A stretch of DNA of 25,604 bases from Vitrella brassicaformis CCMP3155 (lineage: Eukaryota > Protista > Chromerida), in NCBI GenBank assembly GCA_001179505.1, contig CDMY01000740.1, positions 1-25,604 on the forward strand, read 5' to 3'. A program made the position numbers and the translations under genes. How positions within the stretch are numbered: position 1 is the first letter of the stretch; every line of letters begins with the position of its first letter. Positions 6,836 to 17,941 of the stretch are shown piece by piece. The notes under the pieces were generated by a model. It did not search any database. It was not told where the DNA came from and worked only from the letters and a program-made list of their open reading frames with translations.

Positions 6836-8468
6836 TTAAGAAAAGCACCCACTCTCCTTCCCTTTCTTCTCTTCATCACCATGTATCCGTACCTTTAGCT
6901 GCTCCAGCTTTAGGCAATCGGCGATGAGGCGGTCAGGACTGCCGCACGCGAAGCACGCCCGCACCTTTCCTTTCCCAGTCTTACCACCCTTGCCGGCACC
7001 CTTGCCACCACCCTTGGCACCCTCGGAGCCCTTGTGGGGCTTCTTCTTGTTGCTGATGCCCGCTTGATGGTCTGCTGGCTGTTCGGTGGCTTCCCGTGTC
7101 CTTTCTTGCCCTTGGTCTTACTGACGGTCACCTTCTGGGCAGAGCACAGCATCATCTCCTCCAGCTGGCCAGCAGCCTGGCTGCCCTGTGCGACAGAGGG
7201 ACGCTGCTTCAGCATGTCGTTCCTCTGACGGCACATCGTGAGCAGCTCCCTGAATGACGGCTTCAAGCGGATATCCTCCGCGAGCTTCCCCTTTATCATT
7301 CCCCTATATGAATTCTCCGACCGGGGTTTTTTCCACCTGGAATTCCGATGCGTGTAGGCAGCGTATGCGAGAGCTGTTTTGGTTAAGCAAAACTAGACAG
7401 TATGCTCTCGCTTCTGATGCCATCCACATGTCGTTCGGCAGCTGAACAAAGGAGGGAAAAAAGAAAACGATTTATGGCAATCCCTTCCAGTTTCCCGGAT
7501 TTCCCCTTTACTGTTTTACGGACACGCCTGCCCTTCGGGCAGGCACTCCACTTGTCCCTGTGAAGGCTTCAGGGAGTCCCTTGAAGAAGAATTCCGCCTT
7601 CTGCACGTCCGCCAGGGGTGCGATGTCCAGGACGTCAGCCAGCGCATTGCAGTCTGTCACATATATGTTGAAGACCGCAATCGCCTGCTCGAGCGTCCAG
7701 TCCTGCTGCCAGCAGAAGGACACCAGCTTGCTGAATGCCGACGCGTGGTGCCTCGGCCGATCTGGCTGGTAGGTGGCCCTGAGGGCCTCCCACGCCACCA
7801 CGCCGTCCGCAGCGCCGTCTGCCTGCTGCAGCACCGCCAACGCCTCAGGATTGCCCTCGAACGATTGCCCTCGAACCCCCTGTCGTTAGACGAGACCGCC
7901 TTTAGCAGTACGCGTAGAGATGTTGGCTGTCCTTCTCGTACTGTTCAGGGTTGAGCTCCTTCATGGCTTCCCGCTTCCTCGCGTTGAGCAGGTAGTCAAC
8001 CTTGGCGAGCTCCATGCACTTCTCGGCATGCCAGTTGAAGGTCAGGTAGGGGTTCTTATTGTCCCTGTCATCCGGCTGCTTCAGTGGGATTAGGTCGAGC
8101 TTCTTGCGCTTCAGGACAGGCTGCTTGTCCTTATCGCGCTTCCGCTTCTTGCCCTTGCTCCGCTTCGACTTGTCGGACGAGACAGACATGCGCTCGTCGT
8201 TAGCCGACGTGACTTGGCCATGAGCAGCCGCTGCTGCGTCCGCCATGTGTACATCACCGAAGTGACCTCCCTCCGCGCCAGATCCGTCCATCTCGCCGCT
8301 TGGCGGCTCGACTTCGGGACCGGCGGGGTGATGCCCTCCGGGTGGTGCTTCCTTGCACTGATCTGGGTTTCCGCCACCACCGCTGGTATCGCTGTCCATG
8401 TCTCCTTGACCCTCATCATCGTGTGGAGGCTCCCCATGTTGAGATCTCTCATCATCCGCACCGTTCAT
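6836..8468 (-). pseudogene. gag: Ty1/copia-type gag pseudogene (frameshifted; pol absent)
   Basis: ORFs 7902..8468, 7508..7840 and 6910..7299 plus a shifted frame can be stitched together. They give LYA(Y)LLKAV...DGVVAWEALRATY...KAEFFFKGLPEAF (copia gag signature) and a degenerate zinc knuckle CFACGSPDRLIADC at 6914-6955 (CX2CX4HX4C with H to R). Lesions: a 1-nt deletion near 7908, a 14-bp tandem duplication (7849-7862/7863-7876), an insertion at ~7296-7510 and further 1-nt shifts. Confidence 0.8.
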
Positions 8469-8517: not shown

Positions 8518-8769
8518 TCTTAAAGTCAGACAGCTTCACGAGTTCACCAGCGCCAACCAAATCAAAGAGCTTCACAAGTTAACCACCGCCAGACAAGCGA
8601 GAGATTAAGTGATGCACGAAGGAGTCTGAGGCACCAGCCAGTAACTACGATCTACTAGCGATCCAAGTGCGCGACGTCGCTCGGGATTCCCTTCACTCTT
8701 GTGCCTCAGGCGTTCATCTGCCATGGCTGCCAGCCTTCCCTGAGGCTGTGGGCGTCCGCACTTTCAACA
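8518..8769 (-). mobile_element. Putative 5' LTR (~252 bp, TG...GA termini) of the minus-strand copia element
   Basis: The minus strand begins TGTTGAAAG at 8769 and ends TTAAGA at 8518, directly before the PBS. No second LTR is in the window, so the outer boundary is inferred. Confidence 0.45.
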
Positions 8770-8799
8770 GCTCTCACTGTGGCTTCCTGATTCATTCGC

Positions 8800-10661
8800 A
8801 TGGGATTGCCAAGGGAATTCAATCGGGTGCTGCACGAGCACCTGAAATATTACGCCGCCTGGGAGCCCATCAGCAACCACTTCGTCCTCGGGAACTGGGG
8901 CGTCATTGAGAACGGCGTGTTTGTGTCACATGGGAACATCCGTGACTTAGACCCTGCCCTGAGTGACATCATCAGGGAAAGCGGAGTCAGCCGTGAGGCC
9001 TTCGAGGATTTCCGCTCCAGCGTGACCGTCAACGTCAGGACTGCCGGGGAGGGCACGGCCGACCTTCAGGTGTTGGATGGCGATGTCGCGGCCTCTCTCG
9101 AGTTCAAGTTCACAGAACGCAACGCTGTCCTGTTCAAGGGGTCTGTCGAGACCGTCAAGATTCTCAACGTGGACGAAGTATTGGGGCGGCTTGTCTCTCT
9201 TCCTGGCTGGAAGCGCCACTTCCGAGTTGTGGTGGGCCTCCGTAGAGGCAAGAACTGCACCATCGTCGCCGCAAGGGAGGCGGGTGCTACGGTGGCCTTC
9301 GGTGGCAGAGCAGAAGTGCTGCGGAAAATCCAAGCTGGCGCGATGGTAGCTGCCGGAGACTTCACAGTGCACGGAGAGGGCGCTACGAGCCTGTGCATTG
9401 TCGGCAAAGAAGGGGTGGTGGGTCTCGATTTGAGACGCGCCAAAGTGTCCACGTTTTCTTTCCGCTCTGACAACCTTCCCCTCCCCCTGGTTGCCCCGCT
9501 GAATGAGCCGCCGATTGGTCCTCGACGCCTGCCCCCGGTTACCGCGCTGAATGAGTCGCCGGTTGCTCCTTGCCAGAACGGCTCCTCGCCCATCAGCCGC
9601 TGCTTGGCTTCTTTCCTGAAGGCGAGTGCGCTGTGCATAGCGGTAGTGGTCGGCACCCCACTGTTCGTGGTGTTGCTCCTGCTCATAAGTGTGGTATTGG
9701 GGATCTGCTCGCCGTTCCTTCTCATCGCGAAGCTCCTGAAACCCTGTGCCCCTGATTGCTGCCTGCCCTTCCTGGATCGTTTGAATCTCGTGACGGAAGG
9801 AATAATTGGGGCGATTGGTTTACAGTCGGTGGCCTTCGCGTCCCCCCACCTTGCCGCCCCCCCGGCAGCCGCCGCCCCTCCCTTGCCGTCCCTCATTGGT
9901 TTACCGTCGGCGGCCTCCACGCCCCCCCGGCGGCCCCTCAGCGCCTCCCCCATGCCNNNNNNNNNNNNNNNNNNNNNNNNNNNNNNNNNNNNNNNNNNNN
10001 NNNNNNNNNNNNNNNNNNNNNNNNNNNNNNNNNNNNNNNNNNNNNNNNNNNNNNNNNNNNNNNNNNNNNNNNNNNNNNNNNNNNNNNNNNNNNNNNNNNN
10101 NNNNNNNNNNNNNNNNNNNNNNNNNNNNNNNNNNNNNNNNNNNNNNNNNNNNNNNNNNNNNNNNNNNNNNNNNNNNNNNNNNNNNNNNNNNNNNNNNNNN
10201 NNNNNNNNNNNNNNNNNNNNNNNNNNNNNNNNNNNNNNNNNNNNNNNNNNNNNNNNCCCCCCCCCCCCCCCCCCCCCCCCCTGCACCCCGCCGTGCAGGG
10301 GATGTCGAGCAAATGTGGCGAGGAAGGTACGGATCTATCGATGGCTGAGATGGACTGCTCGCTTGGCACGTTGAATGTCGTGTCTGCCCCTCTCTGTGTA
10401 TATGTCAGAGCTCGTCGAGGGAGCTTGTGGCCCATTCCACCATCAGTTCAGGGGGATCTTGGGAGTGTTGAGTTGCACTGTGATGAAGAAGCGGAGTTCC
10501 ATGAGTTCTACGAGGCCCCTCAGGTGTCGTCTTATCGGGTCGTGACTAAAGATGCGGAGGGGTCGACAGTCGTATTGGAAGTCGAAATGGATTGGGGTGA
10601 TGAGCTGTCCGATGACATGACGGAGGAGGCGTCTGGTGAAGATAGCGAGTTTCCGATGTAG
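8800..10661 (+). CDS. Gasdermin-like pore-forming protein with C-terminal membrane hairpin (continuity across the gap is inferred)
   Basis: ATG at 8800 follows an in-frame TGA at 8788, and the frame is uninterrupted to the gap at 9957. Residues 1-215 show gasdermin N-domain hallmarks as I recall them for bacterial/fungal-type members: YYAAWEP...LGNWG, an amphipathic beta region, ILNVDEVLGRL, W-x3-F-x-VV-x2-L-x2-G-x2-CTI and terminal VVGLDLRR. A Pro-rich linker and the uncharged stretch A275-A310 follow. After the gap, poly-Pro plus an acidic tail end at 10661 (frame of ORF 9756..10661). Confidence 0.72.
9957..10256. other. Assembly gap (300 N) within a GC/poly-C Pro-coding stretch
   Basis: N run; the true length and reading frame across it are unknown. 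Confidence 0.99.
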
Positions 10662-10974
10662 GAGGGACCATAGATTATCTTTCTGCTTTTCCAGTATGCT
10701 CTATGGGGTAGTTCTTTTTAGTGTCATGGGCTGATTGTCAGTCATGGGAGGGGAGGAGGTTGGAGGGGAAGAATGGACGGAGGCCTCGGACTTTGCTGTG
10801 CTTCTTGTGCTAGTCCGAGGCCAACTCGGTTGCTTTTGTGATAGTGCCGATATGGTAGATTTTATTAGTGTACATTTCTCCTGTTCTTTCTTTCTGCCTG
10901 ATGTGCATGACTTCTTAATGTATGACTCCACTCGCTACCTCACATGAGTCTCCCTCTCTTCGGTTTCTCTGTGT

Positions 10975-11735
10975 GTGTATGTCTGCCTCCCTTCCTCTAT
11001 GCGCACGGACCTCGTCTTGTCAAGCGAGGCCATCTACATTCAACATCCACGCGGACACAATCCAGGATTTATTGTCATCAACTATCTATCTGTCATCAGA
11101 CGTGCTGTATGTCCCTGTGACTCCTCCCTCCCTCTTGTCAAGCGAGGCCCTCTGCATTGATCACGTATGCGTACACATACAGATTTCTTCATCATCGACT
11201 ATCTATCTGTCATCAGACATGCTGTATGTACCTCTGTTCCCTCCTCCCTCTCCTCGTACGGACCTCCTTTTATCAAGCTAGGACCTCTGCATTTATCATG
11301 TATGCGTACACAAATACAGAGTTCTTCATGATCGACTATCTATCTGTCATCAGACGAGCTGTATACATATACCTGTGTCCCTTTCCCCCTCCCTCCCTCC
11401 CTCCCTCCATGCATACGGACCTCCTTTTACCAAGCGAGGCCCTCGCTGGAGTGTGATGATGCAGAGACAATTGATACCGTGCAAGTTCTCTACAGCGAGG
11501 CCCTCGGCATTCATCATATATGCGTACGCAAATACAGAGTTTCTCATCATCGACTATCTATCTTTCATCGGACGTGCTGTACGTACTTGTGTCCCTCTCT
11601 CCCTCATACGCACGAACTCCTCTTGTCAAGCGAGGCCATCTGCATTCATCATGTATGCGTACAAGAATACAGAGTTCTTCATCGACTATTCATCTGTCAT
11701 CAACTATTTATCTGTCATCAGACGTGCTGTATGTA
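10975..11735 (+). repeat. Second tandem-repeat family B (~6 degenerate units, mostly ~120-155 bp)
   Basis: The anchor caagcgaggcc or a variant occurs at 11021, 11139, 11274, 11431, 11493 and 11627, with recurring actatctatctgtcatcagac. Confidence 0.9.
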
Positions 11736-14742: not shown

Positions 14743-15405
14743 TCGATTGAAGTGATTCAACAAATTGGCCCACAACGGGTCTGACACACACAATGACGCG
14801 TGACAGACACGCGCTGTGGTTTTGTCGGTGTCTCTATGGATGCATCCCAATAATTCAGCGGGTATGTGTGCACATTTGTTGGAGAAAAAGGGCTGCGCGA
14901 GGATGTCTCCCCTTGCGAGCCTGTTGGGGGCCTTCGGGGGCGTGAGGTTTTGAACACGCACAAGGAGATAAGCATCGGAGCCGTGAAGATCATGGTGTGG
15001 GCCCTCTTCTTACTTTTGCTCGCCATTCGCCACGAGAGAGCCTTCACCTTCGGGCCATGTGAGTGAATCACAGAGGATTCATTGATGTCATCTGTGTTGT
15101 GTCGTCACATACAAATGAGGATTTCTTCAAGGCGCTGTTTGGTACCTCTGACTTCTTATCGCCGTCCTGTGCTTCCACGATGACCGTCACGAGCGGAGCT
15201 GATTCTGGGGTCGGCACGCTCAGGGAGGCACTTGGCACGCTGGAAGCACAAAACCCCGAGACAGAGACGGCCATACGATGCGTCCGCGTTTCGGCAGGGA
15301 TCACGGACATTGTTGTAGGGAGTCCTCTGACTTTCGGAGGTGCTGAATCGTGCATTCTTACATATGCGAGTGGTGGCATGCCTGTCTCTCTTTGTCTTAC
15401 CGACT

Positions 15406-17640
15406 TGCATACGCAGGTCGCATGCACAGGTGTGCGCACAGAGACGTTCAGCATATACACACACTCCAAGTCCAAGCGTGCACGCGCAAGTGTGCGGACA
15501 CATTCATCAGGTAAACACACCTCAAGTCCAAAAGTGCATGCGCAAGGGTGCTCACCCATACATTCATCATATACACAGACGCCACGTCCAAACGTGTATG
15601 CACAGGTGTGCGCACAGACATTCATCATATACACACACTCCAAGTCGACACGTGCAGGACAGCAGTGCGCACAGATACATTCATCATATACACACACTCC
15701 AAGTCAACACGTGCATGCGCAGGTGTGCGTACAGACATTCATCATTATACACACTCCAGGTCGACGCGTGCAGAGACATTTATCATTAAACACACTCCAA
15801 GTCGACGCGTGCATGCGCAGGTGTGCGTACAGAGACATTCAAACGTGCATGCGCAGGTGTGCGCACACACAGACATCATATACACACACTCCAAGTCGAC
15901 ACGTGCACGGCAGGTGTGCGCACACAGACATTCATCATATACACACACTCCAAGCCGACACGTGCATGGGCAGGTGTGCGCACAGAGACGTTCGACGTAT
16001 ACACGCACTTCAAGTCGACGCGTGTATGCGCAGGTGTGAGCATACAGACATTCATCATACATACACACACACTCCAAGTCGATGCGTGCATGCGCAGGTG
16101 TGCGCACACGGACATGTCGACGCGTGCATGCGCAGGTGTGCGCACAGAGACATTCATTATGTATACACACACTCCAAGTCGACGCGTGCATGCGCAGATG
16201 TGCGTACAGACATTCATCATTACACACACTCCAAGTCGACGCGTGCATGCGCAGGTGTGCAGACAGAGACATTCGACATTCATCATATACACACACTCCA
16301 AGTCGACGCGTGTATGCGCAGGTGTGCGCACACATTCATTAGGTATACACACCCCAATTCCACACGTGCATGCGCAGGTGTGCATACAGACATTCATCAT
16401 ATACACACACTCCAAGTCGACACGTGCACGGCAGGAGTGCGCACAGAGACATTCATCATATACACACACTCCAAGTCAACACGTGCATGCGCAGGTGTGC
16501 GTACAGAGACATTCAAACGTGCATGCGCAGGTGTGCGCACAGGGACATTCATCATATATACACAGACTCCACGTCCAAACGTGCATGCGCAGGTGTGCGC
16601 AGACAGACATTCACCATATACACACACTCCAAGTCAACACCTGCATGCGCGACATTCATCATTACACACACTCCAAGTCCACACGTGCATGCGCAGATAT
16701 GCGCATAGACACGTTCATCATATATGCACACCCTCCAAGTCCAAACGTGTATGCGCAGGTGTGCGCACAGAGACATTCATCATAGACACACACACTCCAA
16801 GTCGAAATTTCGAAACGTGCTCGTACAGGTGTGCGCAGAGAGTCATTCATCATGTACACACAATCCAAGTTGGCGCGTATATGCGCAGGTGTGCACACAC
16901 AGGTATTCATCATATACACACACTCCAAGTCCACGCGTGCATGCGCAGGTGTACGCACACAGACATTCATCATAGACACACACATTCCAAGTCAACACGT
17001 GTCCAAGTCAACACGTGCATGCGCAGGTATGCGCACAGAGATATTCATCACAGACACACACTCCAAGTCGACGCGTGCATGCGCAGCTGTCTGCACAGAG
17101 ATATTCATCATTACACACACTCCAAGTCGACGCGTGCATGCGCAGGTGTGCGTACAGAGACATTCATCATATACGCACACACAGACATTTATTATATACA
17201 CACACTCCAAGTCGACACGTGTATGCGCACGTGTGCGCAGAAAGACATTCATCATACACACACATACTCCACGTCCAAACGTGTATGCGCAGGTGTGCAG
17301 ACAGAGACATTCGACATTCATCATATACACACACTCCAAGTCGACGCGTGTATGCGCAGGTGTGCGCACACATTCATCAGGTACACACACCCCAAGTCCA
17401 CACGTGCATGCGCAGGTGTGCATACAGACATTCATCATATACACACACTCCAAGTCAACACGTGCATGCCCAGGTGTGCGTACAACACACTCCAAGTCGA
17501 CGCGTGGCTGCGCAGGCGTGCTCACAAAGACATTCAATACATACACACACTCCAAGTCCACGCGTATATGCGCAGGTGTGCACGCAGAGACATTCACTAC
17601 GTAGACATACTTCACGTCGAGCTCCAAGTCGACGCGTGTA
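15406..17640 (-). repeat. 60-bp minisatellite array A5 (CA orientation, ~37 units)
   Basis: Reverse-complement consensus units, with a higher-order duplication of period ~1038 bp (16261 vs 17299). Confidence 0.95.
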
Positions 17641-17941
17641 CATCAAGCAAGCTGAGTTCATTCCTGGCCAAGGCATGTAGAACGAAGACGTCTGTGCCAG
17701 GATCTGATTGTGTTATCGTGTTTATTCTGCCGCCCTCGAGCGCATTCACGAAGTCACTGCATGAGGACGCAATCATAAGTTGTATCGAGTGTGTTCGCTA
17801 GTTCGTGAGACAGACACTTTACCTGAAATGCTTCCTGATTACGCCCCTGGACCTTTCTGGTTTTTTTATGGTTGCCTCGAGACTAGCGCCTTCCACACAC
17901 GAGAGGCCACCAGATGGGGCCGGCTCGCAGGCCACCGTTAT

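What the first reader, a model, noticed from the sequence alone, without database searches (positions are those of the whole stretch)
9445..10661. Unusual gasdermin C-terminus: cleavage-site candidate, membrane hairpin and acidic tail instead of a soluble autoinhibitory domain
Seen: after the pore domain come KVSTFSFR222-SD, a Pro-rich linker with two 16-aa repeats (PLVAPLNEPPIGPRRL / PPVTALNESPVAPCQN), 36 uncharged residues A275-A310 (9622-9729) broken by Pro287 and Pro305, flanking Cys (C258, C268, C279, C303, C316, C320-321), poly-Pro and, past the gap, a D/E-rich tail. Knowledge: characterised gasdermins are soluble and inhibited by a short peptide (bacteria, fungi) or a globular domain (animals), and proteolysis releases them; metacaspases, the caspase relatives of protists, cut after Arg or Lys. 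Inference: a hairpin-anchored, possibly palmitoylated gasdermin held on a specific membrane until cleavage at about R222, which would be a distinct activation architecture. The N-terminal Cys lipidated in many bGSDMs is absent (start MGLPREF).
Basis: partly seen in the sequence, partly recalled or inferred. Interest (0 to 1): 0.8.

Follow-up and report, generated by a model that had tools for sequence, protein, structure and literature searches.

The report
Membrane-anchored algal gasdermin keeps inhibitory tail
A gene of the alga Vitrella brassicaformis encodes a bacterial-type gasdermin pore-forming domain. A unique stretch with a membrane-anchor-like segment separates that domain from the family's conserved acidic end-peptide, so the tail is probably the usual brake, not a replacement for it.

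Summary

The N-domain (aa 1-~216) is a gasdermin fold. The AF2 model has pLDDT >90, the top 22 structural matches are all gasdermins, and the best Z is 10.4. No Pfam gasdermin model matches. Its relatives are ~240-aa bacterial proteins encoded next to CHAT or caspase-like proteases.

The new point is that these bacterial proteins end in a conserved acidic motif, and the Vitrella tail carries it (DWGDELSDDM, 10590-10619). The tail is therefore the ancestral short C-terminal peptide. It is predicted to dock on the pore domain, with weak support.

The hydrophobic, Cys-rich and Pro-rich stretch is an orphan insert at the position of the bacterial cleavage loop. Three paralogs carry a ubiquitin-like domain there instead; the scan has already noted those on other DNA of this genome.

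Across the gap, RNA-like contigs run into it from both sides. An 82-nt intron (10327-10408) is spliced out. The annotated gap-spanning intron (9906-10408) is not seen. Frame continuity is still unproven.

Hairpin topology, palmitoylation and cleavage at R222 are untested.

The parts
8773..8799 (+). Likely 5' UTR: RNA-like contigs of two runs begin at 8773 and 8787, just upstream of the ATG at 8800
   Evidence: table 8. The ORF starts at the first ATG after a stop, and the homology to bacterial proteins starts at residue 1.
8800..9465 (+). Gasdermin-fold pore-forming domain, aa 1-222 (folded core to about aa 216). No N-terminal extension, signal peptide or early Cys.
   Evidence: Profile search: 476 hits, colinear over 1-221. 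Profile against PDB sequences: 7n50 at E 2e-4, then 7n51 and 8sl0. AF2 pLDDT >90. Foldseek top 11 and VIA-align top 22 are all gasdermins, best Z 10.4.
9466..9621 (+). Pro-rich linker with two 16-aa (48-nt) repeats. It starts where bacterial relatives have a short loop before the end-peptide.
   Evidence: AF2 pLDDT 44-57, so it is modelled as disordered.
9622..9729 (+). 36 uncharged residues A275-A310: candidate membrane anchor, either a single span or a monotopic hairpin
   Evidence: Kyte-Doolittle 19-residue mean up to 3.01. AF2 helix 264-300, a break at 301-304, then helix 305-312. In RNA-like contigs. No paralog or database relative.
9730..9813 (+). Juxtamembrane Cys cluster (C316, C320, C321) and the start of a predicted helix (aa 322-339)
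9814..9956 (+). Pro-rich repeat of 81-nt period (27 codons) that runs into the gap. All three frames are open here.
   Evidence: An RNA-like contig of X3 reaches 9950 with no joint.
9957..10256 (.). Assembly gap of unknown true length. For one continuous exon the true length must equal 2 modulo 3 and hold no stop.
   Evidence: Frame arithmetic. No contig of X1, X2, X3 or X5 bridges it.
10257..10326 (+). Exon piece after the gap: run of C (poly-Pro), then a basic stretch. Codons start at 10259. It is spliced to 10409.
   Evidence: The X3 contig covers about 10288-10326 joined to 10409. Translation.
10327..10408 (+). 82-nt intron, GT..AG. It is absent from the RNA-like run X3 and present in the DNA run X5.
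   Evidence: tables 5 and 8; sequence read
10409..10661 (+). Tail exon: a beta-hairpin (aa 410-416 and 422-428 of P0001), the conserved motif DWGDELSDDM (10590-10619), acidic residues to the stop (10659-10661)
   Evidence: MAFFT places the bacterial C-termini on it. An HMM built from bacterial tails alone ranks it second of 945 six-frame pieces, E 0.033. A paralogous tail lies on C761, E 1.4e-5. AF2 pLDDT 77-90. Two-chain test: 0.55 against 0.01.

Best explanation
The gene (Vitrella brassicaformis CCMP3155, database protein P0001) encodes a member of a bacterial-type branch of the gasdermin superfamily.

In bacteria this branch is a protein of about 240 aa. It has a pore-forming domain, a short loop and an acidic C-terminal peptide of about 20 residues, with consensus D-W-G-x-D/E-L-x-D-D-hydrophobic at the very end. 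It is encoded next to CHAT or caspase-like proteases. By analogy with characterised bacterial gasdermins, the peptide holds the domain inactive until the protease cuts the loop.

The Vitrella protein keeps both the domain and the peptide. The loop between them has been replaced by an insert of more than 190 residues: a Pro-rich repeat linker, a 36-residue hydrophobic segment flanked by Cys, and a Pro-rich repeat array that spans the assembly gap.

Most likely working (inferred): the hydrophobic segment holds the still-inhibited protein on a membrane. The tail docks back on the pore domain, which needs both ends on the same side, so a hairpin or monotopic anchor. A protease cut anywhere between about aa 217 and the tail breaks the link, lets the tail leave and frees the pore domain beside the membrane.

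Shown: the fold, the homology, the tail motif, transcription and the 82-nt intron.
Inferred: same polypeptide across the gap, membrane anchoring, topology, inhibition by the tail, proteolytic activation, and which protease.
For: Identity and relatives:
- P0001 is the database protein for this gene.
- No Pfam, NCBIfam or PADLOC hit. A profile search found 476 relatives, mostly 235-255 aa and colinear from residue 1.
- The profile of these hits solved bacterial gasdermins as the three best PDB sequences (7n50 at E 2e-4).

Fold:
- AF2 with 107 sequences: N-domain pLDDT >90, tail 77-90.
- Foldseek: top 11 all gasdermins, best E 1.7e-4.
- VIA-align: top 22 all gasdermins. Best Z 10.4 (rmsd 3.8 A over 160 residues for 9a84_A); MACPF/CDC proteins reach Z 5.4 at most. 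Aligned ranges run to model residues 431-440, so they include the tail.
- ESM Atlas neighbours include Bact_GSDM clusters.

Tail motif:
- 34 of 101 bacterial tails end exactly in DD plus a hydrophobic residue. The median net charge of the last 20 residues is -6.
- In the alignment D438 faces D in 85 of 107 rows and D437 in 67.
- An HMM built from bacterial tails alone ranks the tail of the C761 paralog and this window's tail first and second of 945 six-frame pieces.

Tail docking: ESMFold2 ipSAE 0.55, 0.55 and 0.60 in three runs, best control 0.01. The verdict is 'weak support'. Runs agree in at least 69% of contacts and partner pLDDT is at least 52. The mark was reached by 51 of 78 solved complexes and 2 of 108 mismatched pairs. 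Scores of 0.60 or under were seen in only 5 of those 78 solved complexes and in all 4 mismatches that passed.

Protease neighbours: all three bacterial contigs with enough flank have one. Two have a CHAT+TPR-S gene directly downstream; one has Peptidase_C14 and a weak CHAT upstream.

Known bacterial gasdermins: a short C-terminal peptide bound in cis, a cut in a loop of about 12 aa before it by a CHAT protease, and toxicity on truncation (bioRxiv 10.1101/2021.06.07.447441).

RNA and coding:
- RNA-like contigs cover 8773-9660, 8600-9950, and about 10288-10326 joined to 10409-10900.
- Coding-type GC3 runs through the insert.

Paralogs: three have a ubiquitin-like domain in the same slot followed by the same tail motif.
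Against: - The gap is not closed, so an in-frame link between 9956 and 10257 is assumed. The RNA-like contigs on the two sides differ in depth (17 against 60).
- AF2 draws one continuous helix over 264-300 with no central break. A single span would put the tail and the pore domain on opposite sides, which does not fit inhibition in cis.
- The two-chain test is only 'weak support'.
- The AF2 tail placement partly reflects an alignment in which bacterial tails were laid on it.
- The insert has no relative anywhere, so conservation cannot vouch for its function.
- This copy sits on a long branch (1.6 changes per column) and is lowly represented in two RNA-like runs. It could be a decaying copy.
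- No CHAT protease was found in the Vitrella genome.
Confidence: 0.55

Rival explanations
1. The membrane hairpin itself replaces autoinhibition: the protein is held on a membrane, perhaps palmitoylated. A metacaspase cut after R222 releases the pore domain. The acidic tail has no inhibitory role.
For: The hydrophobic stretch and flanking Cys are real. R222 lies just after the folded core. The genome has at least three Peptidase_C14 (metacaspase-like) loci.
Against: The tail carries the family's conserved terminal motif, is modelled with confidence and is included in the alignments to gasdermin structures. The two-chain test scored 0.55 against 0.01 for the controls. Nothing singles out R222: R242, R243, R267, K274 and the basic stretch just before the tail exon are equally available.
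Confidence: 0.12
2. A single-pass (type II) membrane protein. The pore domain is cytosolic, and the Pro-rich repeats and acidic tail lie in a lumen or outside. The tail motif is then a relic or has a new role, and the domain is controlled in some other way.
For: AF2 predicts one continuous helix over 264-300, with about 26 hydrophobic residues. There is no helix breaker in the middle of the 36 residues. Extended Pro-rich repeats are common in extracellular stalks (general knowledge).
Against: The tail motif is intact where a relic would be expected to decay. Docking is predicted. Uncharged segments of 30-36 residues are typical of monotopic hairpins such as reticulons and caveolin (general knowledge, not tested here).
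Confidence: 0.2
3. Two products or a broken gene. The ORF from 8800 ends inside the gap, and the tail exon belongs to a separate or aberrant transcript. This copy would be a decaying paralog with no working C-terminus.
For: The gap is unread. The window frames before and after it differ. RNA-like depth differs across it. This copy has a long branch. The annotated intron that bridged the gap is not seen in RNA-like contigs.
Against: RNA-like contigs run into the gap from both sides on one strand. The 81-nt repeat period keeps the frame. The tail exon encodes exactly the motif expected at the C-terminus of this family, and the same motif follows the domain in the paralogs. The exon piece 10259-10326 is open up to the gap edge.
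Confidence: 0.13

Closest known systems
Bacterial gasdermins (bGSDM of Runella, Bradyrhizobium, Vitiosangium; PDB 7n50, 7n51, 7n52, 8sl0, 9a84)
   Same: The pore-domain fold is shared (Z 10.4 and 8.1). A weak profile link exists (E 2e-4). Both have a short C-terminal peptide rather than a globular domain. The bacterial relatives of this protein sit next to CHAT or caspase-like proteases, as bGSDMs do.
   Different: The Pfam Bact_GSDM and Gasdermin models match neither this protein nor 105 of its relatives. There is no N-terminal Cys for the buried palmitoyl. This branch has a conserved acidic end motif. Here an insert of more than 190 residues with a hydrophobic segment stands in place of the roughly 12-residue cleavage loop. 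The gene is nuclear, in an alga, and has an intron.
Vitrella paralogs on contigs C745, C761 and C839 (C839 = protein P0002)
   Same: They share the same domain (28-37% identity). P0002 and the C761 copy have the same tail motif after it. Holding the eukaryotic rows as one clade gives a better tree (lnL +16.3; p-AU 0.77).
   Different: They carry a ubiquitin-like domain ending in a Gly-Gly-type motif (RLRGG, ARGGGG, LRAGG) between the domain and the tail (Pfam ubiquitin, E 5e-11 and 1.7e-16). They have no hydrophobic segment. The C761 copy runs on into a macro-like stretch.
Animal gasdermins (GSDMA3, GSDMD, GSDMB, GSDME)
   Same: The N-domain fold is shared (Z 6-7.5), as is the general logic of a C-terminal brake released by proteolysis (general knowledge).
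   Different: Animal gasdermins use a globular C-terminal domain of more than 200 residues and are soluble. This protein has a short peptide and a hydrophobic insert.
Fungal RCD-1 / HET-Q1 type and Trichoplax gasdermin
   Same: Gasdermin fold (Z 7.0-8.2) with a short C-terminus or none.
   Different: Those are reported to be activated by pairing, by redox change or by a subtilisin-type cut (general knowledge). None has a membrane segment or this acidic motif.

Membership tests
Gasdermin superfamily | Pore-forming N-domain fold (twisted beta-sheet core with an N-terminal helix) | tested here: met
   The AF2 model has pLDDT >90 over aa 1-220. Foldseek top 11 are all gasdermins, with probability 1.00 for the top three. 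VIA-align top 22 are all gasdermins, Z 10.4 down to 5.8, and the next families reach Z 5.4 at most.
Gasdermin superfamily | Match to the curated sequence models (Pfam PF04598 Gasdermin, PF26164 Bact_GSDM) | tested here: not met
   No hit at E up to 1 for this protein. No hit at E up to 0.01 for any of the 107 aligned members. PADLOC gave nothing either.
Gasdermin superfamily | Detectable sequence relationship to experimentally defined gasdermins | tested here: met
   Searching the PDB with the family profile gives bGSDM 7n50 (E 2e-4), 7n51 (0.15) and 8sl0 (0.33) as the three best, all colinear. The link is weak but specific.
Bacterial-type gasdermins | Short C-terminal peptide that binds the core in cis and inhibits it | tested here: inconclusive
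   The conserved terminal motif is present. The tail has pLDDT 77-90 and is part of the structural alignments. The two-chain test gave weak support: 0.55 against a best control of 0.01. Inhibition itself cannot be tested here.
Bacterial-type gasdermins | Partner protease, and activation by a cut before the peptide | not testable with these tools
   Bacterial relatives have CHAT or Peptidase_C14 neighbours on all three informative contigs. In Vitrella no CHAT was found, and at least three Peptidase_C14 loci lie elsewhere in the genome. No cleavage data exist.
Bacterial-type gasdermins | N-terminal Cys carrying a buried palmitoyl (present in most bGSDMs) | tested here: not met
   The first Cys is residue 153. 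In relatives position 2 is Gly or Ser.
Gasdermin superfamily | Forms membrane pores; the truncated domain is toxic | not testable with these tools
   This needs expression and liposome or growth assays.
Integral or monotopic membrane protein | Hydrophobic segment long and hydrophobic enough to enter a bilayer | tested here: met
   36 uncharged residues with a Kyte-Doolittle 19-residue mean up to 3.01. AF2 models the segment as helical.
Integral or monotopic membrane protein | Hairpin (both ends on one side) rather than a single span | tested here: inconclusive
   AF2 gives one helix over 264-300 with a break at 301-304, not a central turn. The length of 36 lies between one span and two. Predicted tail docking argues for same-side ends. 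No topology predictor was available.
Integral or monotopic membrane protein | Segment conserved in relatives | tested here: not met
   There is no paralog of 9466-9954 in the genome and no database relative. The segment is absent from the paralogs and the bacterial relatives.

The most novel reading that the evidence does not exclude
The loop between pore domain and inhibitory peptide in this gasdermin branch works as a plug-in slot. In Vitrella it has taken up either a ubiquitin-like domain (three paralogs) or, in this gene, a monotopic membrane anchor with Cys that may carry lipid. This copy would then be a gasdermin parked in its inhibited state on one particular membrane, with both ends in the cytosol. 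A cut on either side of the anchor would fire it there, giving an organelle-addressed cell-death or permeabilisation switch. Nothing like this is described for any gasdermin.
Probability: 0.25. Interest if true: 0.8.

Novelty: new variant of a known kind. Interest (0 to 1): 0.6.

Why it matters
Gasdermins are known from animals, fungi and bacteria. The held literature has no paper that links them to Vitrella or Chromera.

This gene shows three things. First, a bacterial-type, protease-associated branch that the Pfam models miss is present and transcribed in a photosynthetic relative of the apicomplexan parasites. Second, that branch has a recognisable acidic end-peptide. Third, the link between pore domain and end-peptide tolerates large inserts: a membrane-anchor-like segment here and ubiquitin-like domains in the paralogs.

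If the anchor works, this would be the first gasdermin tethered to a membrane before activation. It would offer a simple system for asking how the site of pore formation is chosen.

The finding also corrects the public gene model. The annotated intron over the gap is not supported, and the protein is probably longer than 452 aa.

Tried and rejected
- Pfam, NCBIfam and PADLOC scans of aa 1-385 and of the tail gave nothing meaningful. The MPS-4 hit on the hydrophobic part (E 0.05) is chance.
- phmmer of the domain against PDB sequences gave nothing.
- Word-index searches with 385 aa, 222 aa and the insert (aa 255-345) found only the protein itself.
- AF2 with only three sequences failed (pLDDT 34) and was not used.
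No named bacterial genomes were obtained, so the relatives are unnamed metagenomic proteins.
- Closing the gap failed: no contig of four runs bridges 9951-10287.
- Four contig look-ups were too short to show neighbours (and the second locus).
- A free quick tree split the eukaryotic rows and joined this copy to another long branch. The constrained tree was better, so I do not read the split as separate origins.
- Idea considered and left open: the gap hides a ubiquitin-like domain. The piece just before the tail exon has no ubiquitin-like sequence and is preceded by poly-Pro, so this is unlikely but not excluded.
- Pepco and EACC1, the other protease-associated bacterial pore formers (PMC12642450), were rejected. 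Pepco is 117 aa, and the fold here is gasdermin.
- Two literature searches were badly posed and returned nothing relevant.
- The exon piece 10259-10326 joined to the tail exon was translated once in a script, for reading only. It was not sent to any search or fold tool. Searches and folds used window references or the database protein P0001.
Full report
**What the window is.** The ORF at 8800 matches a database protein of Vitrella brassicaformis CCMP3155 at 100% identity. That protein is P0001, 452 aa, unnamed. The genome is 72.7 Mb in 1064 contigs. P0001 is a two-exon model: 8800-9905 joined to 10409-10658. Its intron (9906-10408) swallows the assembly gap.

**Checking the observation.**
KVSTFSFR is aa 215-222. 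The two 16-aa repeats are aa 229-260. The uncharged stretch is A275-A310 at 9622-9729, with P287 and P305. Cys are at 258, 268, 279, 303, 316, 320 and 321.
- The DNA repeats are real: two 43-nt copies 48 nt apart, 84% identical.
- The hydrophobic stretch is far above the usual membrane threshold, with a Kyte-Doolittle 19-residue mean up to 3.01.
- GC by codon position is the same in the N-domain, the linker and the hydrophobic part (GC3 0.70-0.72). It drops to about 0.5 in the intron and UTR.

**The gap, tested first.**
- I laid the contigs of four public runs on 8600-10900.
- X5 behaves as DNA. It has a 225-kb longest contig and an unspliced piece over 10294-10900.
- X3 behaves as RNA. Its only contig over 10294-10900 lacks 10327-10408, which has GT..AG ends. 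No unspliced contig covers that stretch.
- X1 and X2 are guessed to be RNA and are shallow. Their contigs begin at 8773 and 8787, cover parts of the ORF up to 9660, and then cover 10505-10900.
- So the gene is transcribed and has an 82-nt intron at 10327-10408.
- The annotated donor at 9906 is not seen. The X3 contig runs on to 9950, and on the far side the exon reaches back to the run of C at the gap edge.
- No contig bridges the gap. It lies in an 81-nt-period Pro-rich repeat (copies at 9814 and 9895) next to 25 consecutive C. That explains why assembly broke there.
- After the gap the coding frame has codons starting at 10259: poly-Pro, a basic stretch, then the splice into the tail exon.
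From 10410 onward it is right.
- For one continuous exon the true gap length must equal 2 modulo 3. This is an inference, not a result.

**Is the N-domain a gasdermin?**
- Curated models say nothing. Pfam, NCBIfam and PADLOC give no hit, and word-index searches find only the protein itself.
- A profile of this protein and two paralogs, scored against 1.84 billion representatives, found 476 proteins at E up to 1e-3. Of these, 124 were at 1e-10 or better. Nearly all are 235-255 aa and colinear from residue 1.
- None of 105 of them matches the Pfam gasdermin models.
- A profile of the family picks solved bacterial gasdermins as the three best sequences in the whole PDB (7n50 at E 2e-4).
- With 107 sequences AF2 gives pLDDT >90 for aa 1-220.
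- Foldseek's first 11 PDB matches are all gasdermins: bacterial, GSDMA3, RCD-1, Trichoplax, GSDMD, GSDMB and GSDME.
- VIA-align's first 22 are all gasdermins. The best Z is 10.4 (rmsd 3.8 A over 160 residues for 9a84_A). MACPF/CDC proteins follow at Z 5.4 or less.
- ESM Atlas neighbours point the same way.
- I take the fold as established. The protein belongs to a branch that the Pfam models do not reach.

**What the bacterial relatives are.** On all three contigs long enough to show neighbours, the gene sits beside a clan-CD protease. In two cases a 620-629-aa CHAT+TPR-S protein is directly downstream. In the third, Peptidase_C14 and a weak CHAT lie upstream. This is the operon logic of characterised bacterial gasdermins. 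In those, a CHAT protease cuts a loop of about 12 residues before a C-terminal peptide of about 20 residues that binds the core in cis, and truncating that peptide is toxic (bioRxiv 10.1101/2021.06.07.447441).

**The key result: the tail.**
- The bacterial relatives end in a conserved acidic motif. Its consensus is an acidic residue, W, G, x, D/E, L, x, D, D, then a hydrophobic last residue.
- 34 of 101 tails end exactly in DD plus a hydrophobic residue. The median net charge of the last 20 residues is -6.
- The Vitrella tail has DWGDELSDDM at 10590-10619. MAFFT, unprompted, laid the bacterial C-termini on it across a 200-residue gap. D438 faces D in 85 of 107 rows.
- An HMM built from bacterial tails alone was run on 945 six-frame pieces of the window and three paralog loci. 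Its two best hits were the tail of the C761 paralog (E 0.017) and this tail (E 0.033). The scores are modest, as expected for about 12 residues, but each hit lies exactly where the family predicts.
- AF2 models the tail with pLDDT 77-90: a beta-hairpin at 410-416 and 422-428, the motif, then a short helix. The structural alignments to gasdermins extend to model residues 431-440.
- A two-chain test of aa 1-222 against aa 396-452 gave ipSAE 0.55, 0.55 and 0.60, with a best control of 0.01. The verdict is 'weak support'. Runs agree in at least 69% of contacts, and partner pLDDT is at least 52. The mark was reached by 51 of 78 solved complexes and 2 of 108 mismatched pairs. Scores of 0.60 or under were seen in only 5 of the 78 solved ones and in all 4 mismatches that passed.
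- Given the homology, I judge tail docking likely, about 0.65.
- The motif is also the best argument that the tail exon belongs to the same protein as the domain, despite the gap.

**The insert.**
- Residues from about 217 up to the tail have no paralog in the genome and no relative in the protein collection.
- The genome has three other copies of the domain, on C745, C839 and C761.
- In those copies the same slot holds a ubiquitin-like domain ending in a Gly-Gly-type motif (Pfam ubiquitin E 5e-11 and 1.7e-16).
- A tail with the same motif follows that domain in P0002 (the C839 copy) and in the C761 copy.
- This window's tail exon is 42% identical to that of the C761 copy (E 1.4e-5).
- Holding the four eukaryotic rows as one clade gives a better likelihood than the free search (+16.3 lnL; p-AU 0.77). 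One origin followed by diversification of the slot is therefore compatible with the data. This copy has a long branch.

**Mechanism.**
- The best reading is a gasdermin that keeps the short-peptide brake of its bacterial relatives. It has acquired a membrane-anchor-like segment in the former cleavage loop.
- If the tail binds in cis, both ends lie on one side, and the 36 uncharged residues would form a monotopic hairpin. That length is typical of reticulon- or caveolin-type hairpins (my knowledge, not tested here).
- Against this, AF2 draws one continuous helix over 264-300 with a break only at 301-304. That shape would suit a single span. I could not run a topology predictor.
- Which protease acts, and where, is open. 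The genome has no CHAT but at least three Peptidase_C14 loci.
- R222 is one of many basic residues between the core and the tail, and nothing favours it.
- The Cys cluster beside the hydrophobic segment could be lipidated. This is untested.

**Verdict.** The C-terminus is unusual, but not in the way proposed. The acidic tail is the ancestral inhibitory-type peptide, and the novelty is the orphan hydrophobic, Cys-rich and Pro-rich insert between it and the domain. Earlier notes of this scan on other pieces of the same genome describe the ubiquitin-containing paralogs and reach the same view of the end-peptide. I had reached it before reading them.

Noticed in passing
L002 (G000:C745:6127-9606), about 1447-2660: A paralog has the gasdermin-like domain followed by a ubiquitin-like domain split by an intron and ending in RLRGG (Pfam ubiquitin E 5e-11). 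Soon after comes a second copy of the N-terminal start (GSQMKLARC...), and then a Glyco_hydro_2_N match in the same ORF. This could be a polyprotein relic or a mis-join.
   Followed up: partly
L007 (G000:C761:21152-23275), 175-1842: A paralog holds the C-terminal part of the domain, a ubiquitin-like domain and the acidic motif (RTDWGDELPDDV). It then runs on into a stretch that looks like the start of a macro domain. Only the end of the pore domain was detected on this contig.
   Followed up: partly
window 9906-10408: The public gene model (P0001) places an intron over the assembly gap. RNA-like contigs do not use that donor. The real intron is 10327-10408, so the true protein is probably longer than 452 aa.
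   Followed up: yes
window 11011-11404 and 11679-11720: Tandem repeats of 117-137 nt (about two copies each, 78-80% matches) and an 18-nt repeat lie downstream of the stop codon at 10659-10661. They may inflate the mean depth of the 3' RNA-like contig.
   Followed up: no
L010 (NCBI GCA_029979955.1, contig JARPNH010007142.1), 3580-4542: A 320-aa protein with the same domain (E 3e-45 to the profile) occurs in another assembly that looks eukaryotic. Two ubiquitin genes and a lipase_3 gene lie nearby on the other strand. The model ends right after the domain with no acidic motif. The organism was not identified.
   Followed up: partly
proteins P0042, P0074, P0079, P0093 (metagenomic): Bacterial-type relatives occur as fusions. 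One has a ParA/MinD-like P-loop N-terminus with the domain at the C-terminus (772 aa). One has an N-terminal region that looks TIR-like to me, a hydrophobic stretch, then the domain (368 aa). Two have the domain followed by long C-terminal extensions (728 and 438 aa). These readings are by eye only.
   Followed up: no
window 15063-17801 (+), and 7902-8468 (-): A 912-aa ORF and the neighbouring 188-aa acidic and Lys-rich ORF have no Pfam match. The X3 contig that covers the gasdermin gene extends about 600 nt upstream of 8600, over the 188-aa ORF on the other strand.
   Followed up: no
window 9256-9258 (Cys153): Cys153 is invariant in the three Vitrella copies aligned. It is Cys in 25 and Ala in 32 of the 107 family rows. 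It is the first Cys of the protein.
   Followed up: no
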